Positions 1,983 through 29,790 of a stretch of 64,000 nt of DNA are shown here, one piece after another. The DNA lies in the IMG/VR virus record IMGVR_UViG_3300044712_001462, positions 124,001 through 188,000 of that record. One strand, written 5' to 3'. The notes under the pieces are model-generated. The model saw nothing but the letters and a program-made list of their open reading frames with translations, was not told the DNA's origin and made no database searches. Each line of letters opens with the position of its first letter. Position 1 is the first letter of the stretch. A program made the position numbers and the translations under genes.

Positions 1983-2054
1983 AGCCGACGACTGGATTCG
2001 AACCAGTGTAAACTGATTTACAAAAACAGCGCCTAGCCACTCAGCCACGTCGGC
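1983..2054 (-). tRNA. trnT: tRNA-Thr(UGU), CCA not encoded
   Basis: Reverse complement GCCGACG-TGGCTGAGTGGCTAGGC-G-CTGTT TT TGT AA ATCAG-TTTAC-ACTGG TTCGAAT CCAGT-CGTCGGC-T. 7-bp acceptor stem, T-loop TTCGAAT, anticodon TGT, one U-U mismatch in the anticodon stem. Confidence 0.9.
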
Positions 2055-14909: not shown

Positions 14910-15887
14910 TCAAACGGCTACGGCCTGATCCGAGAACTCTGCAATTGCTTCCTGCCAGGTGGGCATCTCAATCGGAGTCAGGGCTTCCAACTTCTCGATC
15001 GAGAGGGGTGTGGAGTGCACAATCTCAGCAGGCGAATCCCCCATCAGCTGAGCGATCTCCTTGTGCGGAGCGGGTTCGAAAACACGCCCCTGCCAATGAA
15101 TCGCGTTTCGGAGCCGGTATGCAAAGTCAAAGGGCGTGGTCACACCCGAGTTTGCCACATGGTACAGGCCCTGAGGTACCGTCTTCCGGTTCTCAGCCAG
15201 CCAAATGATGACCTTAGCCAGATGCGGCACAAAGCACGGAGTAATCTTCAGATCGTTCGCCAACAAGTGCGAAGGCATTTGTGACGTTCTAGGAGGAGAC
15301 AGAACCTGCTGAGTCAGATCCGTCCGCCACTGACGGTGCTCTGAATACGGAGAAAACAGATGGCCGCATCGGAGAACCCAGTACGAGAAGCCATCGAGCT
15401 GACCCGTCTGGCCCAAACGCATGACTGCGTGCTCGGAATAGGACATGGCAGAGGCCAGGAAGTTGGGAGGGGCCACAGGATCGGTCTCTGTGTACAGATG
15501 AGATGAGGGCTGCATCCCCATCCCAAATACCGAGTGGCACGATAGATGAATTAGTGGGATCTTGAGGAAGGCACCAAGCTTGGCCAGGTTATCTGCCCCC
15601 CGGACAAGCGTATTCCACGTTTGTTCCCTGTTTCGGGCGGCTGCCCTCCAGTCTGCAACTCCCGCGGTGTTAACAATGACGTCTGGCTTCAACAGCTCAA
15701 GCTGCTCGCGGCAAGCCTGAAAATTCGAAACATCAAGCATCTCTCTGGTTTTAACAACGTAATTCCTGACCCCTCCTCCATTCTGTGCATCAAGTTCTCG
15801 TACAATCGCTGATCCTAATTGTCCCGTCGTCCCGGTAATCAGTATCTGGGCGCGTCTTCTCGATACCATATCTTCCCCTATTGACAA
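14910..15887 (-). CDS. rmlD: RmlD (dTDP-4-dehydrorhamnose reductase)-like extended SDR, catalytic motif degenerate
   Basis: ILITGTTGQLG, KPDVIVNTAG, YTETD, GLYHVAN and MPTWQEAI. The canonical STDYVF and YxxxK positions read SCHSVF and LASAM. Confidence 0.75.
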   Translation of the reverse strand: MSIGEDMVSRRRAQILITGTTGQLGSAIVRELDAQNGGGVRNYVVKTREMLDVSNFQACREQLELLKPDVIVNTAGVADWRAAARNREQTWNTLVRGADNLAKLGAFLKIPLIHLSCHSVFGMGMQPSSHLYTETDPVAPPNFLASAMSYSEHAVMRLGQTGQLDGFSYWVLRCGHLFSPYSEHRQWRTDLTQQVLSPPRTSQMPSHLLANDLKITPCFVPHLAKVIIWLAENRKTVPQGLYHVANSGVTTPFDFAYRLRNAIHWQGRVFEPAPHKEIAQLMGDSPAEIVHSTPLSIEKLEALTPIEMPTWQEAIAEFSDQAVAV

Positions 15888-17603: not shown

Positions 17604-18787
17604 GCAGCTTCAGCCGTCTCAGTCTCCTTGTCAGAGGGCTCCTCAGCCGGGACCGGGTCAGGTCGCAACACCTTTCTTCGGGTCGTCTCAGAAGACATAC
17701 CCATGATCGAGGTGAACAATTCATCCATGCGTCCCAATACGAACTCACGCTGCGTCCCATCTTTCCGCAAACGATTCGCTACCGTCGTAGCATCCTCGCC
17801 TACCCCTTTCAGAACGTTGTGGAGCTCTTCGAACTGGGCCCCAATCTGGCGACCATTCAAGATGCCAAACGGCTCAATCTTCGACTTGTACTCCTCAATC
17901 GCTTTGAAGACGCGCTCAATCACGCCATCCTTAAACGACTTTTGCGTACCATCCTGCCAGCCGCGGATCGAAGACACCATCTGCTGCAAACCCATCGCCA
18001 TCGCTTCTTCGATCAACTCCGCCTGCTTCTCAGCGACTTCGGTAAATTGCGCATTCAGTCGCGCCTGTTGTCGCCGGTATTCAGCCGGGTTCACCGCCTT
18101 CAAATACTCCGGCAACTCGAAGTTGTAGGTCTCAAAGCCCACGCCGATCTCCTGGTGGAGCCGTTCAGACGTCGGGTAATCCGACTCGTCATGCAACTCT
18201 CGGAGACGCTCCCGACACGTCGCCATGACTTCTGACCAGTTATTAGCCAGCTCATCAATAGCCTGCCGGAAGTCTGAGATCAGATCGTTGATCTCATCCA
18301 GGAACACACGCACTTCCTCATTCTGATCCTGTTCGGTCTCCCCGCGGACACCAAACAAGCGCACCCCATCTTCGGGGTACTTGAGGGTTTTCGATTGCCA
18401 GTACTTGATGAGCTTGGCCTTGGCCACCTGAACCGCGTGAATCGAAGGATGCTTCGCATACAACACTTTAGTAAAGCGGAGATGCGAGGGATCGCAGTCC
18501 ACGCTGCCAGCCAGCTTATGCGCTGCATCACCCTTAATCTTCCGGCTCTTACTCAGGTCATTGAACTTCAACCGGAAAGCTCGGGCGACTGCCTTAATGG
18601 TCTGCCCAGCTTCACGATAGCGCTCACGCTGTACCGCACGATCTTCTGCTGGAGGCAGATCCGCCAGCATCTTATCCACCTGCTCTTTGGTCAGGTGCTT
18701 CGTTGTCGTCTTCTTCTTTTTCTTCGACGACTTCTTCCCCACGTGCTGCTTAAGCTTCTGTAACAATTCAGGAGAGATACTTGCCAT
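17600..18787 (-). CDS. helical coiled-coil protein, DUF3150-like, partner of the AAA ATPase
   Basis: YWQSKTLKYPEDGVRLF...RERLRELHDESDYP motif; coupled to the ATPase through TAATG. Confidence 0.55.
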   Translation of the reverse strand: MASISPELLQKLKQHVGKKSSKKKKKTTTKHLTKEQVDKMLADLPPAEDRAVQRERYREAGQTIKAVARAFRLKFNDLSKSRKIKGDAAHKLAGSVDCDPSHLRFTKVLYAKHPSIHAVQVAKAKLIKYWQSKTLKYPEDGVRLFGVRGETEQDQNEEVRVFLDEINDLISDFRQAIDELANNWSEVMATCRERLRELHDESDYPTSERLHQEIGVGFETYNFELPEYLKAVNPAEYRRQQARLNAQFTEVAEKQAELIEEAMAMGLQQMVSSIRGWQDGTQKSFKDGVIERVFKAIEEYKSKIEPFGILNGRQIGAQFEELHNVLKGVGEDATTVANRLRKDGTQREFVLGRMDELFTSIMGMSSETTRRKVLRPDPVPAEEPSDKETETAEAA

Positions 18788-21700
18788 TAGTTAACATTGG
18801 GTCGAACTACCGACCGCCTCTTACCTCCGCCAGTGATGTCTGACACGCTGACCACTTGTTTCGCTCCTACATCGTAAAGCCCCGGAGCTGAGGCGTTCAA
18901 ACATCGTCCAGAGGCCCAGGCTCGCAGATCCTGCAGTTTGGTATCTGCCATTCGAGTGACAGGTACCACCTGCTTCGCAGCTTCGTCCAGAGAAACCTCA
19001 CGAATTGCCGCTAGGCGACAGCACGCCTTAATTTCAGCACCCGTCCAGCCCTCACTCAGCGTAAGGAGACTGTGCTTCACCTTGTCTGTCCGCGACTCCG
19101 CATGGCCATACAGATGCAAGTAGATCTGCCAAATAGCCAGGCGCTCTTCCTCTGTGGGAACATCCACAAAGAACACCGCATCAAAACGCTCCGCCCGAGA
19201 GAATTCTGGTGGGAGCATCGAGATGTTGTTGCAATTATGAACCACAACCCCAGACGCCATAAACGAGTGATGGGGCTCCTCAATAACCACATCGTAAACA
19301 GTCTGCTCACCAAGCGGAGAGGGTTCAACAGACACCACACTGACCCACTTCTGAGACCAAATACGTCGAACCTGCTCCAGCTCGTCTGCAATTTCGCGAG
19401 CCGCAGACTCGGACATCTTGGCAACATAGTGATCTACAATCACCTGCCACAACTCCGCCGTATCCGCCGATATTAGCGGAGTGTACTGCCTGTAGTTTGG
19501 CAACACCGATGTATAGCGACCAGCCGCTTTTAAAATAATCTCCAAACAATCATGCATTCCCGGAACACTCCGAACTCCATCTCCGTTAACCTCCTTAGGC
19601 CTACATATCCGACTTTTCTTGTCCGGGTGCTGAAACGGAATGAGCTGTGCAAACCGATGACAAGACTCCGAATCGCGGATACTCAGCTTAGTTACATCCT
19701 TGCGAGGAAGCTTTCGCGAAATCGTTGCAACAGAACCTTGAATATCAAATCTCGTTAAGAGAAGTCGAAGCTGGTCGATCATGACTGGGCTAGTTACCGC
19801 AATCTCAATTCGCCCACGTTTACTGATATAGCCCTCGGCGTCAAAAAGACCCGCTATAAAGGACAACACCACATCCTTGTCCGGAGATGCCATTACATCT
19901 TGAGGTATTTCTCGCACACATTGCAGGCATAAGATGTCTGGAAAATACTGCTCAAACCAATCTAACAGAAGACGACGATCCAGATAGATGTAGTACGACT
20001 GTGCTTTTGGACGCTTATCAATAACCTTTGGCTCTACTCCAAACAAACTACGAATCAGCGAGCATAGGTGCTGAGTCAGACCTGCGCTAAACTCAGATAA
20101 TTGAAGCCGATGGGCCTTCCTGTTTAAAAGCTTACCTTTACCCCCGTCCCCGCAGCAAAATCCAAGAAAATACGCCAATTCTGCTGTTAAGTACTCTGGT
20201 TGTTTAACAGGTTTCTGTCGGGATCGTGCTGGTAACGGCAGATACCGTTTTGCGGGTTTTGATCCCACTGGAGCTTTAGCTTTAGAAAGCAATAGATCAT
20301 CAGCAGTAAGATGCTTCGCTTCTTTCTCAGCTATTTTACCGTTTTGAAAGACAAAGAATCTGTGATCAGGCGTTGCATCGATGAACCCAGCTGACGTACG
20401 TATGCGTAGCATGTCGCGAATACCGCGGCTGTACACTAGCCCGGAGCCAGATACCCACTGACCAGTCTCGTCATCCACACTCAGGAACGTTTCACGTTGG
20501 CCTACAAGCGACTCAAGTTTACAGATACGCCCGTCCGCCAACTCAACAAGTGTTCCACCGGCCAAACACGTACCGATGAAAAACACATCTGACGTATGGT
20601 CGTTCAACCAACTGAGTAACTTACCAAAAATGCGATCACCAGAGCCGCCATCTGTCATCGATGATGACTGACCTGCTCCGGACAGTGCTTTCTCGATTTC
20701 CACTTGTGTTACGAGATACCCGTTTCCGGTACCTCTCTTACGGTTACCCGTAAGGTCAGACTATTTCATCCTGTCGCTGCGACAGGGCCCCCGTTTCGAG
20801 ATCACTTGATCTCTACTTCCTTTCGGAATAGTCGTTGAACGTTTCAGTCATAGACTGACTTCGCTGCAGATAATCCAGGCTAGTGGACTTCCCTGCAATT
20901 AGAGGGCTTTGCATCGGCATGTCACCACGCCGAGGGACTAACGTTAATCCACAAAGAGAATGCACGGCTGCATAGCATCAGCCAGCTTCAGAGCCATCCG
21001 GACATTGGCATCCGTTTCACCCTGAAACTTCGATCTGAGTGCGCCCATATCCATCATGAGCACTTTGCGCTGGGTCTCATTACCCATCGCCTTAATGATC
21101 GCACTCTTACCGGCACCAGGCACACCAAGGAGCAGCATACCACGAGGCTGAAGCAGAGGATTATCTCGTCGCCGAAGTAGCTGCTTCGAGAACTCCTTGA
21201 ATTGCTGCAACCCACCCAACTGCGCATAAGTGTCTGTGCCTTTGTAGATCTCCAGTACACCGCGCTTCTTGAGATCCTGAGCCTTCAGGTCCCAGATCTC
21301 ATTGGGATCGAGCTTACCGGTCTTCGCCAGAGACAAACTCAGAGCATCCTCGAAACCACGTCGAGACAATCCCGCCGCAGCATCTAAGACCAGTCGTTTG
21401 TCGTCATCCGTTTTAGGTAACTCCGTCTCCGCACAGATGTTCTTAGCGATCGACCAGAGTTGTTCCTTACCTGGCAGCTCGTGCTCCAGGATTACAAAGT
21501 CCTTCTCTAGCTCTCGAGGGATCTCAATCATCGGAGAGAGCACAATGGCGCAGCAGGAGACCTGGCCCTCCGCCTTACAATCCGTTACCGCGTTCTGCAG
21601 AGCCTGCATGATGGGTAGGTTGTGAACCAGCTGCTGGTGATGGAAATTCTTGAGAATCCAGATGACGTGAGTAGCACCCTCGCTACCCTGGGACTCTTGA

Positions 21701-21981
21701 GCCTGCCGAAGGGCCAGAGACATCACAGGCATGTCCTGAACCAACGGGAGAGGCTTCATCTGGTAGTTAGTATTCTTCGAAATGAAATCTCTTAGCGTCT
21801 CAGCTGTATCTCGGGGGCATTTGAGGCCCGCGGCGAAGTCCCACACAATGACCGGCCATTGTCTCTCAGCACATACCGGTACGATCTCTGCGATAGCATC
21901 CCCAAACTCATAAGTCTCAACCCAAAGGCCGGTGAAACCGGCTCGCAAATACTGCCGTACTTGCTCCCCAAGTGCTGGCAC
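18787..21981 (-). CDS. Ycf46-like AAA+ ATPase, join(21981-20947, 20700-18787); ~537 aa after intron and intein removal
   Basis: Walker A GVPGAGKS; Walker B ILFVD|EIEK restored by splicing; sensor-1 FIGT|CNNI restored by intein excision; arginine-finger region PPEFSRAERFD. Confidence 0.9.
19234..20568 (-). mobile_element. intein (445 aa) with LAGLIDADG homing endonuclease
   Basis: N-terminal CLAGGT, block B ATPDHRFF, LAGLIDADG motifs LAYFLGFCCGDG and FIAGLFDAEG, block F TVYDV, C-terminal VVHN followed by +1 Cys. Confidence 0.93.
20701..20946 (-). ncRNA. group I self-splicing intron (246 nt, no ORF)
   Basis: The 5' exon ends in U, paired U.G in P1 (GGAU/GUCC). Core elements P AATTGCAGGGAA, Q ATCTGCAGC, R GTTCAACGACTA, S GAAATAGTCT; terminal G. 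Removal fuses GAT|GAA in frame. Confidence 0.93.
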
Positions 21982-23447: not shown

Positions 23448-23729
23448 TTACACTTTGTATCCGCGTTTCCTCAATTCCGCGTCAGCATGTACCACGCTGC
23501 CAGGGATACTAGTAGAGCGCATGGGCTCAGGGCGCGTCGAGGTTGCCTCAAAAAAACACTGGAGAGCGCGCCTGCTCGTAAAAATCCGTCCACCTATGCG
23601 CAGAGTATCTAACAGAACCCCGCGATAACCGACGGTGGCCCAGCGCCAGACTGTCGAAGAAGATGTTTTCCCAGGTAACGCCTTCGCTGCCTCAGAGAGC
23701 GAAAGCACGTCTTCGTCGTCGAATTTCAA
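23448..23729 (-). CDS. DUF1580-like HTH protein, putative excisionase/recombination directionality factor
   Basis: LSLSEAAKALPG...STVWRWA..G.RGV.L.T.RIGGRIFTSR.AL..FF; overlaps the integrase stop. Confidence 0.75.
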   Translation of the reverse strand: MKFDDEDVLSLSEAAKALPGKTSSSTVWRWATVGYRGVLLDTLRIGGRIFTSRRALQCFFEATSTRPEPMRSTSIPGSVVHADAELRKRGYKV

Positions 23730-24919
23730 CCAAATTCCTCCGCAATTGATCGAGCCAGCTTCAAGTTCTTCTCCGCGTAGATTTCGCTGGTGCGAATATG
23801 CTTGTGCCCTAACAACACCTGGCTGCCTTCTACCCCGTACTTTTCACGTACGCGAGTAGCAAGGTTGTGCCGGAGCTGATTAGGAGCCCACGGAGTTACT
23901 CCTGCTGTGATACACGCTCGCTGAACTGCGCGCCGATAGGAATTGTGGTCATAGTGTGTCCCAGGTGATTTCACACGTCTTATCTTGCGGTTAGAGCCTG
24001 GTTTGTTACCGCACGATACGGGAGTAGTGCGCCGCTTATGTCGGGCGGCTAAACGCTGCTCTTCCGCCTCCCGCGGTGAAAAGCAGTATTCCAAGGGTGA
24101 TCGTTGCAAAAAGCGACGGAGTATTTTCTGCGCCCGTCGCCCTATCGAAATTTCCCTGCGAGCATCTTCCTGGTGTGCCAGCTTGTGATCAGGTGGCACG
24201 TAGAGCCACACGGGATCTTTCATGGAAATATCACACGGCCTGAGAAGACAGATCTCCATCGGCCTCATCCCTGTCCAGTACTGCAAACGAACCATCTGCG
24301 CCACCACTTTGGGCAGGTATGGAATCGTCTGTCTCAAGTCTTTCTCAGGCACCGGCAAAATCTTTTCGGTCTCCCTGGCCTTCGTCAGCCCTTTTCTTAA
24401 CCCTTCGAGGGTATTGAGATGAGCATGCGTATTCTTCTCTACCAGCCCAGCGCTCTCTGCCCACTTGAAGAGCCGCTTCACACAACCGATATACCGGTTC
24501 ACCGTGGAGCGCGAGAGCTTGCCTTCGCGGACTAACTGGGACTGGAGATCTCGGAGAGACCGAGCATCAAAGCGATCAGCTAACGTGTGCCCATAGTATT
24601 TGAGCAGCACATCGTTAGCCGCCTTGATTACCGCTACCTGGGAGGATAGCTTCCCCCTCTTAGACTGGTAACGGATATCCACGAACTCGTCCAGATAGCG
24701 CAGGACGAGGTGGTTGACGAACAGCGGTTGAGACCTCTCTTTGGCCACCACCGCGGACCCAGGATGCACCTGCCTCCCAGCGAGATGGTCGGCAATGAGC
24801 TGCGTACCCTGCGCCTCTGCAGAGCTCTTTTCCCGGCCTAAATAAATTCGCTTTCCAGCGATGTGAACGTAGAACTGACCGGTTGCGGCATGCAGACGAA
24901 CTTGGGGTTTGCGTGGCAT
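23726..24919 (-). CDS. int: tyrosine integrase
   Basis: Arm-binding N-terminus (RLHAATGQFYVHIAGKRIYLG); catalytic TGMRPMEI, NQLRH, LLGH and IYA. ATG at 24919. Confidence 0.92.
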   Translation of the reverse strand: MPRKPQVRLHAATGQFYVHIAGKRIYLGREKSSAEAQGTQLIADHLAGRQVHPGSAVVAKERSQPLFVNHLVLRYLDEFVDIRYQSKRGKLSSQVAVIKAANDVLLKYYGHTLADRFDARSLRDLQSQLVREGKLSRSTVNRYIGCVKRLFKWAESAGLVEKNTHAHLNTLEGLRKGLTKARETEKILPVPEKDLRQTIPYLPKVVAQMVRLQYWTGMRPMEICLLRPCDISMKDPVWLYVPPDHKLAHQEDARREISIGRRAQKILRRFLQRSPLEYCFSPREAEEQRLAARHKRRTTPVSCGNKPGSNRKIRRVKSPGTHYDHNSYRRAVQRACITAGVTPWAPNQLRHNLATRVREKYGVEGSQVLLGHKHIRTSEIYAEKNLKLARSIAEEFG

Positions 24920-24929
24920 GGCTGACCTT

Positions 24930-25207
24930 TTTAGTTGGTAGTCGACTACCAACTAAACTGTAAAGCAATCAGCAGGCCAGCCCTGGCTGTTTTCCTAAGT
25001 TCTTATGCTGTAAGGCTTTACTGAGTGGGCCGTGACAGACTCGAACTGTCGCCCTCTTGCATGTCAAGGAAAAACAGGCGAAATGAGGTCACTCGTAAAA
25101 ACGGCCCAAAACCTTTACAGATAAGCACTTAAGCGTCATTGCATACTTCGCAGCTGGCTTTACTTTTTGCCCATTTTTTCAGCGATAGTTGGTAGTTAGT
25201 TGGTAGT
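24930..25207. other. attP site: tRNA-derived core flanked by arm-type repeats
   Basis: TAGTTGGTAGT at 24932-24942, inverted at 24945-24955, and tandem direct at 25186-25196 and 25197-25207; the core at 25026-25068 lies between them. Confidence 0.8.
25026..25068 (-). pseudogene. 3' half of tRNA-Val(GAC), attP core
   Basis: Reverse complement C-TTGACAT-GCAAG-AGGGC-GACAG TTCGAGT CTGTC-ACGGCCC-A gives the anticodon loop, T-arm and acceptor 3' strand; the 5' half is absent. Confidence 0.85.
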
Positions 25208-25250
25208 CCTAACCGCCAACATACCGCGCCAAAAACGTGCGCCAAGTAAC

Positions 25251-25285
25251 AAAAAACGGCTGTGACAGTTTCCCATCACAGCCGT
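25251..25285 (-). terminator. intrinsic terminator
   Basis: ACGGCTGTGA...TCACAGCCGT followed by a U-tract. Confidence 0.8.
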
Positions 25286-25310: not shown

Positions 25311-26708
25311 CTATGCTGCAGAATCAACAACCACATCCAACCCCGGTACCGCCTCTCCCCAGAACTCCTCTTCATTGATTCTCGAGGCGTTGAACAGTCG
25401 ACGACCAATAAAGGCATTCCAGGCCTCAATCAGAATCCGCCGATAACACATTCCTGCGGTGTCCGAGCCGCCTTCAGACCGATTAACATCTTTCGCAAAG
25501 TTACACGCCACACGGAGTGCCGAGTAGGACGTATTCGCATTCGCTGTCTGATCAGTCAGTCCTGTGACAAAACTAATAGCAGACGCGGGAAGAGCGTGAA
25601 TGATGTTGTCTTTGGCTTTCTTGTCAGACACCACATGCTTCTTGATGTGATCTGTAATCCGGTCGCACATCGTCCAGCGATCCATCTTCTCCATACCAGG
25701 CAACGGAGTCCAACACGGTAACGGACCACCCGTCAGAGGCTTCTTACCTGTGTACCAACCGTTGGAGCCCAGATAAACCACCGCGGCAATGTCCGAGGCA
25801 TCAAATGGAAAAGCGTTCACCCACTCGTTACGAGTAGTCCGCTTGTTGTAGACCTTTCTAGGGTGATACCGGTCGACGGCCCAAGCGTAAGCATGAATAT
25901 TACGCAGCTCGGAAAGGTAATCGAACAAAATCTCCGCATCAAACGTCGAACACAGTTGCCAAGGCCTACCGCTATTACGACACACATCGTAACTGTGAAT
26001 TCGACGAATAACAGCAGTCACCTGGGAACCAGGACTCCAGCCTAGGGCACCCAGGAGACGTCCAAATTCATCGCTCTGGAAATCACTGGGCAAGGAAAAC
26101 TGCATGGTGTGCCCGCAGAAAGAGGGCAACGTCAATGTGTGAAATGTCCGGTCATCCGGCGCAGGCACGCAGGTTCGTCCGCGGCGAATAGAACATTGAT
26201 AGGCTGGCTCTAAAGCCGCCTGGGGCTCTGGAGGCATGACCTCGTCTACTGGACGGCTGCACTCACCGCCAACAGCTCGCAGCAGTCGATTGTACTCGGC
26301 TACTGTAATGCGCTTCTCTGCGTATTCAGACCAGTTGTGGGAAATCAAAATGGATGTGTGCTTCTTCTTACTTGCGTCAACCGTGTTGTCGAGCACAATA
26401 TCCGAATCGGTTACCACCAGATCAGGGTAGACAGTAGCCTCGTATACGGCATCCTGTTTATAGCTTTGTAGCATAGCCTGTCTGTTAACCGCAACTGTCT
26501 TGTCGGGGGTTGTCTTGTTAGTCTTTTGGATCAGCTCCTCAGTGATCGGAACCACCCCCAACGTAAAAGCGGGTGAGGAATAGAGACGATGTCCACTATT
26601 CTGAAGAAAGGTCTCAAACCATCCTGGTTTGTGGTTAAAAGGTAAAGGCAGCTGACTAGTCATACGTCGAACACTCCATTTTCCTGTACACGTCACGAAA
26701 GAAATCAA
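25311..26708 (-). CDS. large hypothetical protein
   Basis: Open for 465 aa (likely start 26663); C-terminal LIEAWNAFIG motif. Confidence 0.6.
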   Translation of the reverse strand: MISFVTCTGKWSVRRMTSQLPLPFNHKPGWFETFLQNSGHRLYSSPAFTLGVVPITEELIQKTNKTTPDKTVAVNRQAMLQSYKQDAVYEATVYPDLVVTDSDIVLDNTVDASKKKHTSILISHNWSEYAEKRITVAEYNRLLRAVGGECSRPVDEVMPPEPQAALEPAYQCSIRRGRTCVPAPDDRTFHTLTLPSFCGHTMQFSLPSDFQSDEFGRLLGALGWSPGSQVTAVIRRIHSYDVCRNSGRPWQLCSTFDAEILFDYLSELRNIHAYAWAVDRYHPRKVYNKRTTRNEWVNAFPFDASDIAAVVYLGSNGWYTGKKPLTGGPLPCWTPLPGMEKMDRWTMCDRITDHIKKHVVSDKKAKDNIIHALPASAISFVTGLTDQTANANTSYSALRVACNFAKDVNRSEGGSDTAGMCYRRILIEAWNAFIGRRLFNASRINEEEFWGEAVPGLDVVVDSAA

Positions 26709-28058
26709 TCACCTGTTTTGGCGACTCTGCGTGCAGAAGTTCAACGTTAAACGTTGGACCGTCGCCCCGGGTATTGAACTGAGCTTCGGCACTGATGGCT
26801 GACTGCCCCTGATGCTCGAACAGCTCAATACCTACGTTAACCGCCCGGGTCCCCCGGTCATAAATCCACATGTAAGCAGCCCGTCGAGCAGTCGACAGCA
26901 CAAAAACGTTGCTCTCCTTGAAGCCATAATCCAGATAATCATTCCAGGTTGCTGACATCAAACTTCTCCACGGAGTTCTTATACCCGCACGCCGGGCAAA
27001 TACACTCCGACTCACGATCCCACTCAAAACCACCTTCCTGAACAATGTCACTATCCGTGAGAAGAATAGTGCACTCTGCTGCGATCTGCAGAGTCGAGGA
27101 CTGGCCGCACGCCGGGCAGGCCAGTCCCTCTAAGAATCCTGTGTTACTCATCCTCGAACTCGTCCTCCAGCCATCCTAGAGACTTGAATGCGCTCCATAC
27201 CTCGTCTTCCCCGAACTCACCGTCCCCGATGTTGTGCTCCCACAACCAACTAGAGACCTCTTCTGCCCAGTCATCGGGAAGACCACATATGGCATCACTC
27301 GGACACAACCACTGAATCCGCTCAATAGCGTCTTCGTGTTCTCGCTCATTGAGGTCCGAGTCGTCAAGAACAGGATAGTCTTCTAGCCGATCCTGGATTT
27401 CGTTCCACTTTTTGAAGGCAGGAGTGATCTGCCCTTGGGCGTCATAGACACGGATGGAATACCCTGAGATCCATCCGCAGGCCCAATGACTGTGCTCCTC
27501 CGGAACAGCTGTACCGTCTTCCACAAACGGCTTCATTTCCTCAACGATCGCTGCGGCGTTACTCTGGTCTAAAACATCGGAGTCGCGATTGTGGGTGTAG
27601 ACAATGCACCAGTTCTCAGAATCATCAGGCTCGCCAAACCAACAGAAGCATTCCATCTTGCGCCAACTGCCAGCTGCTTCTTTGGCTAGGTCTTCGAGCT
27701 GAGAACTACTCACGTCGAGCGTCCCAGGCATTCAATAGACCTGCCAACTCATCCAGGTCACGATCCCGAATCGTGTAGTATTCCTGCCGCACAAACTCTG
27801 CGGCTTCCTCGTCTGACCAGTCTGGACGGTAGGCCAGAACCCCATCAACACACGACATCTCGTGAATGACTCTAAGCACGATCTTCTCCCTCCACGACTT
27901 CGATCTCGAAATCCTCCAGACAACCGATGGGTATGGTTCTGTGAAACTCATCTAGCGATGCGAAGGAATACTCGCTCCACGCACCTAATCTGTTTTCTCC
28001 GGCTGGCAGAAATGCTCTGTCATCACCGTCACTCAGGTCATTCACAATCTGTGTCACC

Positions 28059-28733
28059 TTAATCCGCATGTTTCCTCCGATAGACAAACAATGCATCCCT
28101 GATACCAGGCCACTGCGGGATGCTACATACTTTTACCGACTTCCAGTACTTGTCGAGCTCGCGATGAAACCCCTCGCTGCCTGTACAGCCCCAAGTACCC
28201 TCTCCGACGTACAGGAAATACTCTCCCCGGTAAGTGCGCAGAGCCCTTAAAGCCAAATGGCTTCTGTACGGGGGCCAGCACATAAATAGAGTTCTACCTT
28301 GGTGCTCTCGAGGCGTACGAGATGTTCCGCGATGCACAGAGGTGTACGTTACATAATGCCCGTACGGGTTCTCGCTACAGGCACTTCCAGGCGGGTTCTT
28401 ATCCACAGCCAGAACATCAACACCGCGATGTTCTAATAAGCTGGCCCAATAGCCTGTCCCAGCGCCCACTTCCAGAATGGGAGAAAAGTCAGCCAGCGTA
28501 TCCAAGGCATTCTCGTCGGGAATAGCCCACGCCCACTTGCAAGTACAGGCGTGGCGCAGGGCCCGTACTAACATGAAATCCCAAGGTCGCTCCTTATGAC
28601 AAATCTCAAACACTTGGTGGACAGTCAGATACGGATTCGAGCCCTCTGAGTTTTGCTCAATAAAGAGTCGGGCGAATTCTTTGTTATCCAGCTCTCGCTC
28701 AGTATAAGTAGTCGATTGGTACAACGACTCCAT
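28059..28733 (-). CDS. SAM-dependent methyltransferase-fold protein
   Basis: ILEVGAGTGYWA...VLAVD...LFMCWPPY. Confidence 0.7.
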   Translation of the reverse strand: MESLYQSTTYTERELDNKEFARLFIEQNSEGSNPYLTVHQVFEICHKERPWDFMLVRALRHACTCKWAWAIPDENALDTLADFSPILEVGAGTGYWASLLEHRGVDVLAVDKNPPGSACSENPYGHYVTYTSVHRGTSRTPREHQGRTLFMCWPPYRSHLALRALRTYRGEYFLYVGEGTWGCTGSEGFHRELDKYWKSVKVCSIPQWPGIRDALFVYRRKHAD

Positions 28734-29226
28734 ATTGCTGCCTTTCTAGTTCAGTAGCCACGCGGGCCCGAAACACTTTACGGCCAAAATACTCATCCTC
28801 ATCGCCATCCGCTTCTTCTCGCTGGTACTTGAGCCAATGAGCCATATCTTGAGCCACACACTCAATCCCACGAAACCAACGATCAACCTCCCACTTCCGA
28901 TTGATGTTGAAGGTATTGCTACCTCCCTCGTAGCGAGACTCAATGATTGCTAGAGGTAGCCGCGGGCGAGTAAACTCTTTTTGCTGTTCCTCGCGCTTGT
29001 CTCGGAGGCTCCAAGGAATCCCATCTGGCCAGCGGTCGTACTGCCAACGAGGCATGTTGTGACTACGACATTGGTGCTGACCTTCCCACTTCGTTCCGCA
29101 GAAACCGCAATAGTTGGTTCCGAAACTGCACGCAAGCCAGCGCTCCCCGCAAGCCATACACTCGTACTCTGTCATGCCATCGTCGACATATCCGACCGCT
29201 CGCCATTTGTTCATCCCACTAACCCC

Positions 29227-29790
29227 TTACCAGGAAGATGTGTAAATGTATTCGACGTTGTAGTCGCCTTCATCCTGCTCCAGCAACTCCTCAAGCAGCT
29301 TCTTCGTGTATTGGAGATCCTGAACGTACCAGCCGTTGTACTCGGTCTCTCCGAAAAAGAACCCACTTCTCGTGGGCAAGAGCTCTTCGCATACCTGCGT
29401 ATTGACCACGATCTCCCCGTCTACCATAGTGGTTTCTACCCTGCCGTCACCATGGTACGTCGTACACCCAGGAAGCGGGCACGGAGTTAGCTCCACAGAG
29501 GCCAACACCTCGTTAATTGTTGTCAGCAGCTCTTTGAGTCCCGCTCGATCTGCTCGAAATTCTCGACAATTATCCACGCCATCTTGCACGTTATCGACGA
29601 ACCAGTTGTGTATGGCGTTCGCTTTGCGCCAGTAACCCACCTGCTCAGTAACGTAGCTAACCTTCTTAGGATCAATCTCGGTGTAAGGCTCTCCGCCCCG
29701 CGTCACAGTAACCCAAAACTTATCTTCGTCTTTCTGATGGTCCCAGCGCTGAACGTACGTGCGCCGGTACAAGTACATGTCTAAACCCAC
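29227..29790 (-). CDS. conserved phage protein (MGLDMY/YWRKANAIH family)
   Basis: MGLDMYL...YWRKANAIHNWF...LLPTRSGFFFG...Y.SSW. Confidence 0.7.
   Translation of the reverse strand: MGLDMYLYRRTYVQRWDHQKDEDKFWVTVTRGGEPYTEIDPKKVSYVTEQVGYWRKANAIHNWFVDNVQDGVDNCREFRADRAGLKELLTTINEVLASVELTPCPLPGCTTYHGDGRVETTMVDGEIVVNTQVCEELLPTRSGFFFGETEYNGWYVQDLQYTKKLLEELLEQDEGDYNVEYIYTSSW

What the first reader, a model, noticed from the sequence alone, without database searches (positions are those of the whole stretch)
23448..25221. Intact attP indicates a large temperate phage integrating into tRNA-Val(GAC), probably of a Planctomycete
Seen: a half tRNA whose homology starts at the 7-nt anticodon loop, with the 11-bp repeat TAGTTGGTAGT on both sides (a perfect 28-bp palindrome at 24930-24957 and a tandem pair at 25186-25207). 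Phage-type genes continue on both flanks. Known: tyrosine integrases often cross over in anticodon loops, and arms on both sides define attP rather than attL/attR. Inference: the contig is the excised form. The palindrome 11 nt before the int ATG may autoregulate int. With 64 kb holding no structural genes, the genome is likely very large for an integrating phage.
Basis: partly seen in the sequence, partly recalled or inferred. Interest (0 to 1): 0.68.

Follow-up and report, generated by a model that had tools for sequence, protein, structure and literature searches.

The report
Integration site of a jumbo phage
A 224.5-kb phage, probably of a Planctomycete, carries an intact lambda-style integration kit (integrase, excisionase-like gene and an attachment site built on half of a tRNA-Val gene), which is rare in so large a phage, but no host tRNA or integrated copy was found.

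Summary
All four exact copies of TAGTTGGTAGT on the 224,528-bp contig sit within 280 bp: a 28-bp palindrome 10 nt before the integrase ATG, and a tandem pair on the far side of a tRNA-Val(GAC) 3' half that starts at the anticodon loop.

The contig is an IMG/VR virus record that CheckV rates 100% complete. It has a large terminase, a baseplate gene, one integrase and a single copy of the core. This is therefore an attP, not an attL/attR or a tandem-island junction.

The integrase is a full-length lambda-Int-like enzyme with an arm-binding N-domain. The next gene (DUF1580) looks like an excisionase. Their cellular relatives are all Planctomycetota. In integrated relatives a whole tRNA gene is followed by the same layout: spacer, inverted repeat, integrase.

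Two sister phage contigs (integrase 57% identical, syntenic on both sides) keep the opposite, 5' half of the same tRNA, with their own repeat word. The shared tRNA sequence is 11 nt around the anticodon loop.

Not shown: a host tRNA matching beyond the anticodon arm, any lysogen, or a repressor. Fifteen related jumbo contigs lack an integrase. The mechanism is ordinary; the setting is unusual.

The parts
23726..24919 (-). Tyrosine integrase, 397 aa (ATG at 24919), lambda-Int-like with an arm-binding N-domain
   Evidence: PF00589 at 4.6e-15 and phrog_1 at 3.7e-30. It is the only PF00589 hit on the contig. Residues invariant across 9 homologues include R219, K246, R350, H372 and Y381. In the AF2 model (pLDDT 79) residues 7-46 form three strands plus a helix, followed by a helical core-binding domain and the catalytic domain. 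The best PDB matches are full-length lambda Int (1z1b, 1z1g, 5j0n; E 3e-8).
23448..23729 (-). DUF1580 protein, 93 aa, overlapping the int stop: candidate excisionase (directionality factor)
   Evidence: PF07618 at 3.2e-11. Three of 4 orthologues also hit HTH_17, best E 7.6e-4. The AF2 model (pLDDT 63) has a strand-helix-helix-strand-strand-helix layout. Best folds are BldC (TMt 0.74-0.79), Pukovnik Xis 4j2n (0.72) and Tn916 Xis 1y6u, with weak E-values of 0.09-0.46. It directly follows int in the window, L012, L136 and L134, and lies within 2 kb of int in Botrimarina.
24930..24957 (.). P' arm: perfect 28-bp palindrome made of two inverted TAGTTGGTAGT words, 10 nt before the int ATG. Presumed arm-type Int sites and possible int operator
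   Evidence: hairpin z-score -5.1. Relatives have an inverted repeat at the same position with a different word: L012 and L136 use GATTTCGGTA, 5 nt, TACCGAAATC; L134 uses ATCGGTA; L139 uses AACCGGTA; L164 uses GGGTAGT; Botrimarina L420 and L421 use GGGAGTAGT.
24977..25015 (-). Conserved P'-arm block (CCTTACAGCATAAG.ACTTAGG, then the GC palindrome CCAGGGCTGG); function unknown
   Evidence: Aligned with L012 and L136. The CTTAGG plus GC-palindrome layout recurs in the two Botrimarina elements.
25026..25067 (-). Intact 3' half of tRNA-Val(GAC), from anticodon loop to discriminator. After integration it would rebuild the host gene at attL
   Evidence: Its acceptor strand ACGGCCC pairs 7/7 with the GGGCCGT of the 5' half carried by L012 and L136.
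25058..25068 (-). Core: CTTGACATGCA, the only intact tRNA sequence shared with the sister phages. It contains the 7-nt anticodon loop (25061-25067), the inferred overlap/crossover segment
   Evidence: In L012 and L136 tRNA homology runs from the 5' end and stops at ...GCA. In the window it starts at C-TTGACAT.
25069..25107 (-). Decayed 5' part of the tRNA: acceptor strand GGGCCGTT (25107->25100) followed by 31 nt that no longer form a D arm
   Evidence: Infernal gives a full-span alignment with the D arm replaced. MAFFT shows residual similarity to the L012 5' half.
25186..25207 (.). P arm: two tandem TAGTTGGTAGT words, about 120-140 bp from the core. Presumed arm-type Int sites
   Evidence: They align with three TACCGA-type words at the same place in L012 and L136.
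25238..25284 (-). Intrinsic terminator of the upstream gene; marks the outer edge of the attP region
   Evidence: Hairpin plus U run, -32.1 kcal/mol, z-score -6.1.
25311..26708 (-). Orphan ORF (465 aa from the first start codon) abutting the P arm. Lineage-specific cargo at what would be the prophage end
   Evidence: No Pfam, PHROG or Atlas relative. L012 has an unrelated 159-aa ORF at this position.

Best explanation
Window 24920-25235 is the attP of a complete, non-integrated 224.5-kb tailed phage. It sits directly upstream of an int gene and an xis-like gene.

Inferred mechanism:
- The integrase binds the TAGTTGGTAGT words through its N-terminal domain. Two words lie in tandem about 130 bp to one side of the core, and two lie inverted about 120 bp to the other side.
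- Its core-binding and catalytic domains bind the anticodon-stem-like sequences around the loop TTGACAT.
- Strand exchange with a host tRNA-Val(GAC) gene takes place in the 7-nt anticodon loop.
- attL would then be the host 5' half, the phage 3' half, the P' arm and int. This rebuilds a working tRNA under the host promoter, which is the layout seen in integrated relatives.
- attR would hold the decayed phage 5' part joined to the displaced host 3' half.
- The DUF1580 protein would direct excision.
- The palindrome next to the int start would also let Int repress its own gene.

The ancestral attP probably contained a whole tRNA-Val. This lineage kept the 3' half intact. The sister lineage (L012, L136) kept the 5' half, which would rebuild the gene at attR, a minority arrangement that is already known.

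Shown: the anatomy, the protein folds and families, the synteny, the co-variation of repeat word and integrase, and the family-wide attL layout.
Inferred: integration itself, the host, and the roles of Xis and the operator.
For: 1. The contig is a phage. TerL matches phrog_675 at 4.8e-56. There are baseplate, SbcCD and helicase genes. 255 of 295 ORFs are on one strand and 93% of the contig is coding. It is an IMG/VR virus record with CheckV 100%. Relatives in the same TerL clade reach 200-236 kb.
2. There is one core and one int on the contig, and no second att copy.
3. The repeat word occurs 4 times, all at att, against about 0.1 expected.
4. L012 is collinear with window 34472-19000 on both sides of att. 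An independent 16-kb Logan contig with the identical int has a matching gene order across att (no DNA held).
5. L012 and L136 carry the complementary tRNA half and their own word (TTCGGTA) at the same arm positions.
6. Between L012 and L136, int has dN/dS 0.15. The tRNA half plus core is 43/43 identical, against about 83% identity in the arm.
7. Integrated relatives have a whole tRNA gene roughly 120-510 nt upstream of the int match, on the same strand, in 7 IMG/VR loci. Two of these are tRNA-Val isoacceptors. Botrimarina tRNA-Ala and an ENA contig with tRNA-Asp show the same. The spacing from tRNA to inverted repeat to ATG matches the window.
8. Botrimarina L421 holds a tRNA-Gly 3' half that also begins at the anticodon loop.
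9. The integrase is lambda-Int-like, with an arm-binding N-domain and a conserved catalytic set. The DUF1580 protein is Xis-like.
10. Every int relative that carries a source name is from Planctomycetota (Pirellulales, Botrimarina, Bythopirellula).
Against: - No host tRNA matches beyond the anticodon arm. The tRNA-Val(GAC) genes fetched with the anticodon-arm pattern, Planctomycete ones (L035, L092) included, have acceptor stems that would not pair with the phage half.
- No integrated copy or close TerL relative was found in 401 Planctomycetota genomes. TerL relatives never sit on contigs longer than 236 kb.
- Fifteen related jumbo contigs have no integrase, so the clade is otherwise apparently non-integrating.
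- No HTH_3 or S24 repressor is recognisable on the contig.
- All genes around int run in one direction, with no divergent switch.
- No read evidence could be obtained.
Confidence: 0.68

Rival explanations
1. The tRNA-like piece is a decaying phage-encoded tRNA-Val pseudogene. The recombinase next to it is a relic or serves another purpose, such as resolving genome multimers or circularising the genome as Cre/loxP does in P1. On this view the phage does not integrate into a chromosome.
For: - Both lineages still span a whole tRNA length (82 nt), with both acceptor strands and one arm lost.
- No host tRNA match and no lysogen were found.
- No repressor was recognised.
- Clade relatives lack int.
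- The phage does encode one tRNA of its own, tRNA-Thr.
Against: - The intact and decayed parts meet at the anticodon loop from opposite sides in two lineages. This is expected for a crossover point and unlikely for random decay.
- Repeat words on both sides co-vary with the integrase.
- The layout equals the attL of integrated family members.
- The integrase has a lambda-type arm-binding domain and is under purifying selection.
- The palindrome has only a 2-nt centre, too short for a lox- or dif-type crossover spacer.
Confidence: 0.2
2. The junction is not an attP but the seam between two elements. Either it is a tandem array in a bacterial chromosome, or a small int-xis element has inserted into a tRNA-Val gene of the phage itself.
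For: Such attP-like seams exist. The Botrimarina chromosome locus L421 has phage-like genes, a tRNA-Gly 3' half, the inverted repeat and int in that order. The 465-aa neighbour is lineage-specific.
Against: - No second core, tRNA fragment, integrase or terminase is on the 224.5-kb contig.
- Arm-type words lie on both sides of one core, as in attP. In attL or attR they would be split between the two junctions.
- Gene order on both sides is conserved in the sister phage.
- GC content and GC skew are uniform across the site.
- Contig size equals that of complete clade relatives.
Confidence: 0.05
3. The module is intact but was acquired recently from a small Planctomycete temperate element. It is not, or only rarely, used by this otherwise lytic jumbo phage.
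For: Int relatives in IMG/VR are on 4-78 kb contigs. The jumbo clade otherwise lacks int. No switch genes were found.
Against: The module is kept in at least three diverged phages (57% int identity), at the same genomic place, under purifying selection, with an intact tRNA half in each.
Confidence: 0.07

Closest known systems
Lambda-type heterobivalent integrase/attP systems (lambda, HP1, L5, P22)
   Same: A three-domain integrase with an N-terminal arm-binding domain. Arm-type repeats lie about 120-140 bp either side of a core. A small winged-helix Xis-like gene is adjacent.
   Different: The arm word is new, and only four perfect copies exist (two tandem, two inverted). One pair abuts the int start codon. 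No accessory-factor sites are known. The first His of the catalytic HxxR motif is Asn in the whole family. Nothing has been tested biochemically.
Anticodon-loop ('A' sublocation) tRNA-gene integration, as catalogued by Williams 2002 and Islander (PMC4383910)
   Same: The attP holds a tRNA-gene fragment that begins at the anticodon loop, and the anticodon stem supplies the symmetric core. In integrated relatives int lies just downstream of the rebuilt tRNA.
   Different: The attP still spans a whole decayed tRNA. Sister phages keep the opposite (5') half, a type that makes up 159 of 3,919 Islander islands. No cognate host tRNA has been identified.
Integrative elements of cultured Planctomycetes (e.g. 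Botrimarina mediterranea CP036350.1, loci L420 and L421)
   Same: The same integrase family (41-42% identity) with a DUF1580 partner. The same P' layout: tRNA end, CTTAGG block, GC palindrome, GTAGT-type inverted repeat, ATG.
   Different: Those elements are chromosomal and target tRNA-Ala or tRNA-Gly. Here the module sits inside a 224.5-kb phage genome.
Jumbo prophages and temperate jumbo phages (oral metagenome jumbo prophages, PMC7782811; plasmid-prophage pBtic235, PMC9700832)
   Same: A genome over 200 kb with signs of a temperate lifestyle.
   Different: Those were seen integrated or as plasmids. Here only the free form with its attP is seen. The phage belongs to a different, uncultivated TerL clade (closest GenBank phage TerL matches 24-33% identical).

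Membership tests
Tyrosine recombinase, lambda-Int-like heterobivalent integrase | Catalytic domain with the conserved Arg-Lys-(His)-Arg-His/Trp-Tyr set | tested here: met
   PF00589 at 56 bits, above the 27.1 cut-off. R219, K246, R350, H372 and Y381 are invariant in 9 homologues. The first His position is Asn347 in all of them.
Tyrosine recombinase, lambda-Int-like heterobivalent integrase | Separate N-terminal arm-type DNA-binding domain (three-stranded sheet plus helix) | tested here: met
   In the AF2 model, strands 7-10, 15-20 and 23-28 plus helix 31-46 have pLDDT 77-86. The top PDB hits are full-length lambda Int aligned over about 400 columns. This is a predicted fold only.
Complex attP (arm-type sites on both sides of a core) | Repeated arm-type words on both arms, distinct from the core sequence | tested here: met
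   Four exact 11-mers lie at 24932-24955 and 25186-25207, flanking the core at 25058-25068, and occur nowhere else on the contig. They co-vary with int in L012 and L136. Binding has not been tested.
Complex attP (arm-type sites on both sides of a core) | Core identical to an attB in a host genome | tested here: inconclusive
   The anticodon arm is identical in many bacteria, including Planctomycetes. No genome matches the rest of the half. Searches were exact-match, capped or sampled.
tRNA-gene integration, anticodon-loop sublocation | The element-borne tRNA-gene fragment begins (or ends) at the anticodon loop and can complete the gene | tested here: met
   The window 3' half and the L012 5' half overlap only in CTTGACATGCA. 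They join into a cloverleaf with a 7/7 acceptor stem.
tRNA-gene integration, anticodon-loop sublocation | A lysogen shows a rebuilt tRNA at one end and a displaced fragment at the other | not testable with these tools
   No lysogen was found. Only more distant family members are seen integrated.
Excisionase / HTH_17-type directionality factor (for DUF1580) | Small winged-helix fold of the Xis/MerR N-domain type, encoded next to int | tested here: inconclusive
   HTH_17 is hit by 3 of 4 orthologues, but below the Pfam cut-off. The moderate-confidence model matches BldC, Pukovnik Xis and Tn916 Xis at TMt 0.63-0.79 with weak E-values. Adjacency to int is constant.
Jumbo phage (genome over 200 kb) | A complete tailed-phage genome over 200 kb | tested here: met
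   224,528 bp, CheckV 100%. TerL and baseplate genes are present. An 8-nt end overlap, when collapsed, closes a 246-codon frame across the ends.
Temperate phage | Found integrated, or carrying a recognisable lysogeny switch | tested here: not met
   No TerL relative was found in 401 Planctomycetota genomes. No HTH_3 or Peptidase_S24 protein is on the contig. The absence comes from samples and profile searches, so temperate lifestyle remains an inference from int, xis and attP.

The most novel reading that the evidence does not exclude
A sublineage of an otherwise integrase-free jumbo-phage clade captured a Planctomycete int-xis-attP cassette and became able to insert about 224 kb into a host tRNA-Val(GAC) gene. 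Its attP descends from a whole tRNA gene. Sister phages have since kept opposite halves of it. This would be a natural intermediate showing how elements switch between rebuilding the 3' and the 5' part of their target tRNA.
Probability: 0.45. Interest if true: 0.6.

Novelty: new member of a known kind. Interest (0 to 1): 0.48.

Why it matters
- Integrated prophages over 200 kb are rarely reported. In one census the longest of 12,498 predicted prophages was under 140 kb (PMC7782811). A paper search for Planctomycetes, jumbo phage and integrase found no report of such a phage.
- If this phage lysogenises, it would put about 224 kb of foreign DNA into a Planctomycete chromosome at a tRNA gene, and it would give a handle for host assignment.
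- The pair of sister attPs that keep opposite tRNA halves delimits the crossover to the anticodon loop without any experiment.
- It also suggests how the minority 5'-fragment class of integrating elements can arise from a whole-tRNA attP.
- The compact Int/attP/Xis set with an 11-bp arm word could be tried as an integration tool for Planctomycetes.

Tried and rejected
**Host tRNA**
- The exact 42-nt half was not found in genome contigs, viral contigs or metagenome contigs.
- The anticodon-arm pattern hit many phyla and was capped at 120 hits. The best 3' half among the tRNA-Val(GAC) genes parsed from them matched only 37/42 with gaps.
- No match within 3 mismatches in 401 Planctomycetota genomes, and none within 2 mismatches for the T-arm/acceptor 25-mer in 151.
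- A gapped acceptor-stem pattern in metagenomes returned mostly tRNA-Lys and no tRNA-Val(GAC) among the 30 hits inspected.

**Lysogens and relatives**
- TerL was not found in 401 Planctomycetota genomes.
- The L012-type 5' half was not found in IMG/VR.
- A single-protein AAA query found nothing in IMG/VR.
- Blastn of the att region against GenBank phages found nothing.

**Reads**

**Circularity**
- No terminal repeat of 20 nt or more.
- The frame that closes across the ends has no homologue in 5 complete relatives, so circularity stays only suggestive.

**Empty site**
- In distant relatives only the AAA ATPase and, in two of the three, the next gene downstream are alignable, so no precise insertion scar could be defined.

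**Other**
- HTH_3 and Peptidase_S24 are absent from the contig.
- The 465-aa neighbour has no relatives.
- A PDB sequence search with the DUF1580 profile found nothing meaningful.

**Readings rejected**
- The palindrome as a lox- or dif-like crossover site: its centre is only 2 nt, and spacers in relatives vary from 1 to 6 nt.
- A tandem-array seam.
- An int-xis islet inserted into a phage tRNA gene.
Full report
**1. Observation**

- 24930-24957 is a perfect 28-bp palindrome built from TAGTTGGTAGT and its complement.
- 25186-25207 is the same 11-mer twice in tandem.
- On the minus strand, 25067->25026 is the 3' half of a tRNA-Val(GAC): loop TTGACAT, the stem 3' strand, a 5-nt variable loop, a canonical T arm, acceptor ACGGCCC and discriminator A.

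The 11-mer occurs four times on the whole contig, all at these sites, where about 0.1 copies are expected. Near-matches elsewhere are at chance level.

ARAGORN calls no tRNA here. Infernal aligns 25107->25026 to the tRNA model end to end at 24.4 bits (E 0.0088, below the gathering score). Both acceptor strands, the anticodon arm and the T arm are present, and 25 unrelated nt stand in place of the D arm. The piece is therefore a whole-tRNA remnant whose 3' half is intact.

**2. What the DNA belongs to**

The window is bases 124001-188000 of a single 224,528-bp contig. It is an IMG/VR virus record, classed linear, with CheckV completeness 100%.
- 93% of the contig is coding, and 255 of 295 ORFs lie on one strand.
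- It encodes a GpA-type large terminase (phrog_675, 4.8e-56), a baseplate wedge protein, SbcCD and a helicase.
- TerL relatives form a large uncultivated clade whose longest contigs are 200-236 kb, some with terminal repeats. The closest matches among GenBank phage TerL proteins are 24-33% identical.
- There is no terminal repeat of 20 nt or more. The ends share 8 nt, and collapsing them closes a 246-codon frame across the ends. This suggests a circular assembly but could not be confirmed.

**3. Why this is an attP**

- The contig has one tyrosine integrase and one copy of the core. No second copy of any part of the att region exists.
- The repeat word lies on both sides of the core, about 120 bp toward int and 120-140 bp away from it. 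That is the attP arrangement. In attL and attR the arms are separated.
- A strong terminator (25284->25238, z-score -6.1) closes the upstream gene, so the site fills the roughly 320-bp gap between that terminator and the int ATG at 24919.
- GC content and GC skew are uniform across the site.
- A 16-kb Logan contig from SRR26046407 encodes the identical integrase. Its called genes match the window's order across att, but no DNA is held for it.
- The 13-kb ENA contig L012 (integrase 57% identical) is collinear with window 34472-19000 on both sides of att, at 34-82% protein identity. L136 and L137 are a third member of the group.

**4. The sister phages**

Upstream of int, L012 and L136 carry the 5' half of tRNA-Val(GAC): acceptor GGGCCGT, a canonical D arm, the anticodon stem and the loop. 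Homology stops after ...TTGACATGCA.
- Infernal again gives a full-span, 82-nt alignment, this time with the T arm replaced and a GU-paired acceptor remnant, ACGGTTT.
- The only intact tRNA sequence shared by the two attP types is CTTGACATGCA, window 25068->25058.
- The L012 5' half and the window 3' half pair 7/7 in the acceptor stem and together form a normal cloverleaf.
- The sisters have their own repeat word (TTCGGTA/TACCGA) at the same places: an inverted pair just before the int ATG and three direct copies in the other arm. Repeat word and integrase therefore co-vary, as arm-type sites should.
- Between L012 and L136, int is 84% identical with dN/dS 0.15. The tRNA half plus core is 43/43 identical, while the arm is about 83% identical.

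The simplest history is an ancestral attP that held a whole tRNA-Val, with each lineage keeping one half under selection. Islander counts 3,760 islands with a 3' fragment and 159 with a 5' fragment, and 2,083 anticodon-centred sites (PMC4383910). Both types are therefore known. Seeing both in close relatives at the same target is what is new here.

**5. The proteins**

*Integrase (397 aa).*
- PF00589 and phrog_1.
- The conserved catalytic residues are present; Asn replaces the first His throughout the family.
- In the AF2 model (pLDDT 79) residues 7-46 form a three-stranded sheet plus a helix, followed by a linker, a helical core-binding domain and the catalytic domain. The best PDB hits are full-length lambda Int.

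*DUF1580 protein (93 aa), the next gene.*
- It overlaps the int stop.
- It lies immediately downstream of int in the three phages and in a Pirellulaceae MAG, and within 2 kb of int in Botrimarina.
- It weakly matches HTH_17.
- Its model is a winged helix most like BldC, Pukovnik Xis and Tn916 Xis. The model has moderate confidence and the E-values are weak.

I read it as the probable excisionase. That is an inference.

**6. The integrase family in cells**

- All 1,674 relatives at E <= 1e-10 that carry a source name come from Planctomycetota: Pirellulales, Pirellulaceae, Botrimarina and Bythopirellula.
- In seven IMG/VR loci, in Botrimarina mediterranea and on a 4.5-Mb ENA contig, a complete tRNA gene lies upstream of int on the same strand. 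The genes are Val-CAC, Val-TAC, Arg, Gly, Ala (two), Pro (two) and Asp.
- Where the spacer was read (L139, L164, L420), 75-76 nt follow the tRNA, then a GGTA- or GTAGT-type inverted repeat, then about 13-20 nt, then the ATG.
- The window has 68 nt, the palindrome and 10 nt. A CTTAGG block with a GC palindrome is shared too.
- A second Botrimarina element (L421) has a tRNA-Gly(CCC) 3' half that also starts at the anticodon loop. It sits inside a chromosome with phage-like genes upstream. This is a reminder that tandem arrays can mimic an attP. That reading is excluded here by point 3.

**7. What is missing**

- No genome or metagenome record matches the phage's tRNA half beyond the 17-nt anticodon arm, which is shared across many phyla. 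The tRNA-Val(GAC) genes fetched, Planctomycete ones (L035, L092) included, have acceptor stems that would not pair with it. These searches were exact-match, capped or sampled, so the host may simply be unsampled.
- No TerL relative lies in 401 Planctomycetota genomes.
- Fifteen large clade relatives, seven of them at least 90% complete, have no integrase.
- No HTH_3 or S24 repressor is recognisable on the contig.
Junction reads could therefore not be sought, and I did not try another route.

**8. Verdict**

The finding is real. It is a textbook-style attP, int and xis module of the anticodon-loop tRNA class, and it is very probably functional. It sits in an unusual carrier: a complete 224.5-kb phage from a clade that otherwise lacks integrases, most likely infecting a Pirellulales-type Planctomycete.

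Integration, the host and the regulatory role of the palindrome remain inferences. I put about 0.68 on the full reading and about 0.2 on a non-integrating relic or other use. The mechanism is known. The novelty lies in the setting and in the reciprocal tRNA halves of the sister phages.

Noticed in passing
window 18787-21981 (-): An AAA+ ATPase gene is interrupted right after its Walker B motif (...ILFVD, stop at 20944-20946). Five in-frame stops follow. The next ORF (18787-20703) carries Intein_splicing and LAGLIDADG domains and then the AAA lid. The L012 homologue is continuous with only about 41 aa at this point, so the window has an intein/homing-endonuclease insertion of roughly 1.7 kb. 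As assembled, its N-terminal junction is not in frame.
   Followed up: partly
window 25069-25107 and L012 9222-9260: In both phage lineages the decayed half of the tRNA remnant is exactly 7 nt longer than the real half would be, so both remnants are 82 nt long, and both keep their acceptor strand. No explanation was found.
   Followed up: partly
L421 (Botrimarina mediterranea CP036350.1, 768834-774045): An attP-like junction lies inside a bacterial chromosome. In order: phage-like genes (HNH, collagen-like), a terminator, a tRNA-Gly(CCC) 3' half starting at the anticodon loop, a GGGAGTAGT inverted repeat, int, and DUF1580 further on. It is probably a tandem array of elements or a resident prophage seam.
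   Followed up: partly
contig ends (G000:C1:1-8 and 224521-224528): The ends share only GAAACCAC. Collapsing this overlap joins a 246-codon open frame (164 + 82) across the ends, which suggests the record is a circular assembly opened inside a gene.
   Followed up: partly
window 1983-2054 (-): tRNA-Thr(TGT) is the only complete tRNA gene on the 224.5-kb contig.
   Followed up: no
window 14910-15887 (-): An RmlD-type dTDP-4-dehydrorhamnose reductase / NAD-dependent epimerase gene (PF04321, 2.7e-34) in the phage: a possible sugar-modification or auxiliary metabolic gene.
   Followed up: no
L134 9900-10000 (Pirellulaceae MAG GCA_054641915.1): The closest cellular integrase relative (46% identity, with DUF1580) lies next to ordinary bacterial genes, with an ATCGGTA inverted repeat before int. 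No tRNA gene lies within 10 kb, so not all family members target tRNA genes, or that element has lost its site.
   Followed up: partly
P0142-P0144 (relatives of the TerL at contig 27449-29308): Several TerL homologues in this jumbo clade are 886-1067 aa long and carry intein and LAGLIDADG domains. Inteins seem common in the clade.
   Followed up: no
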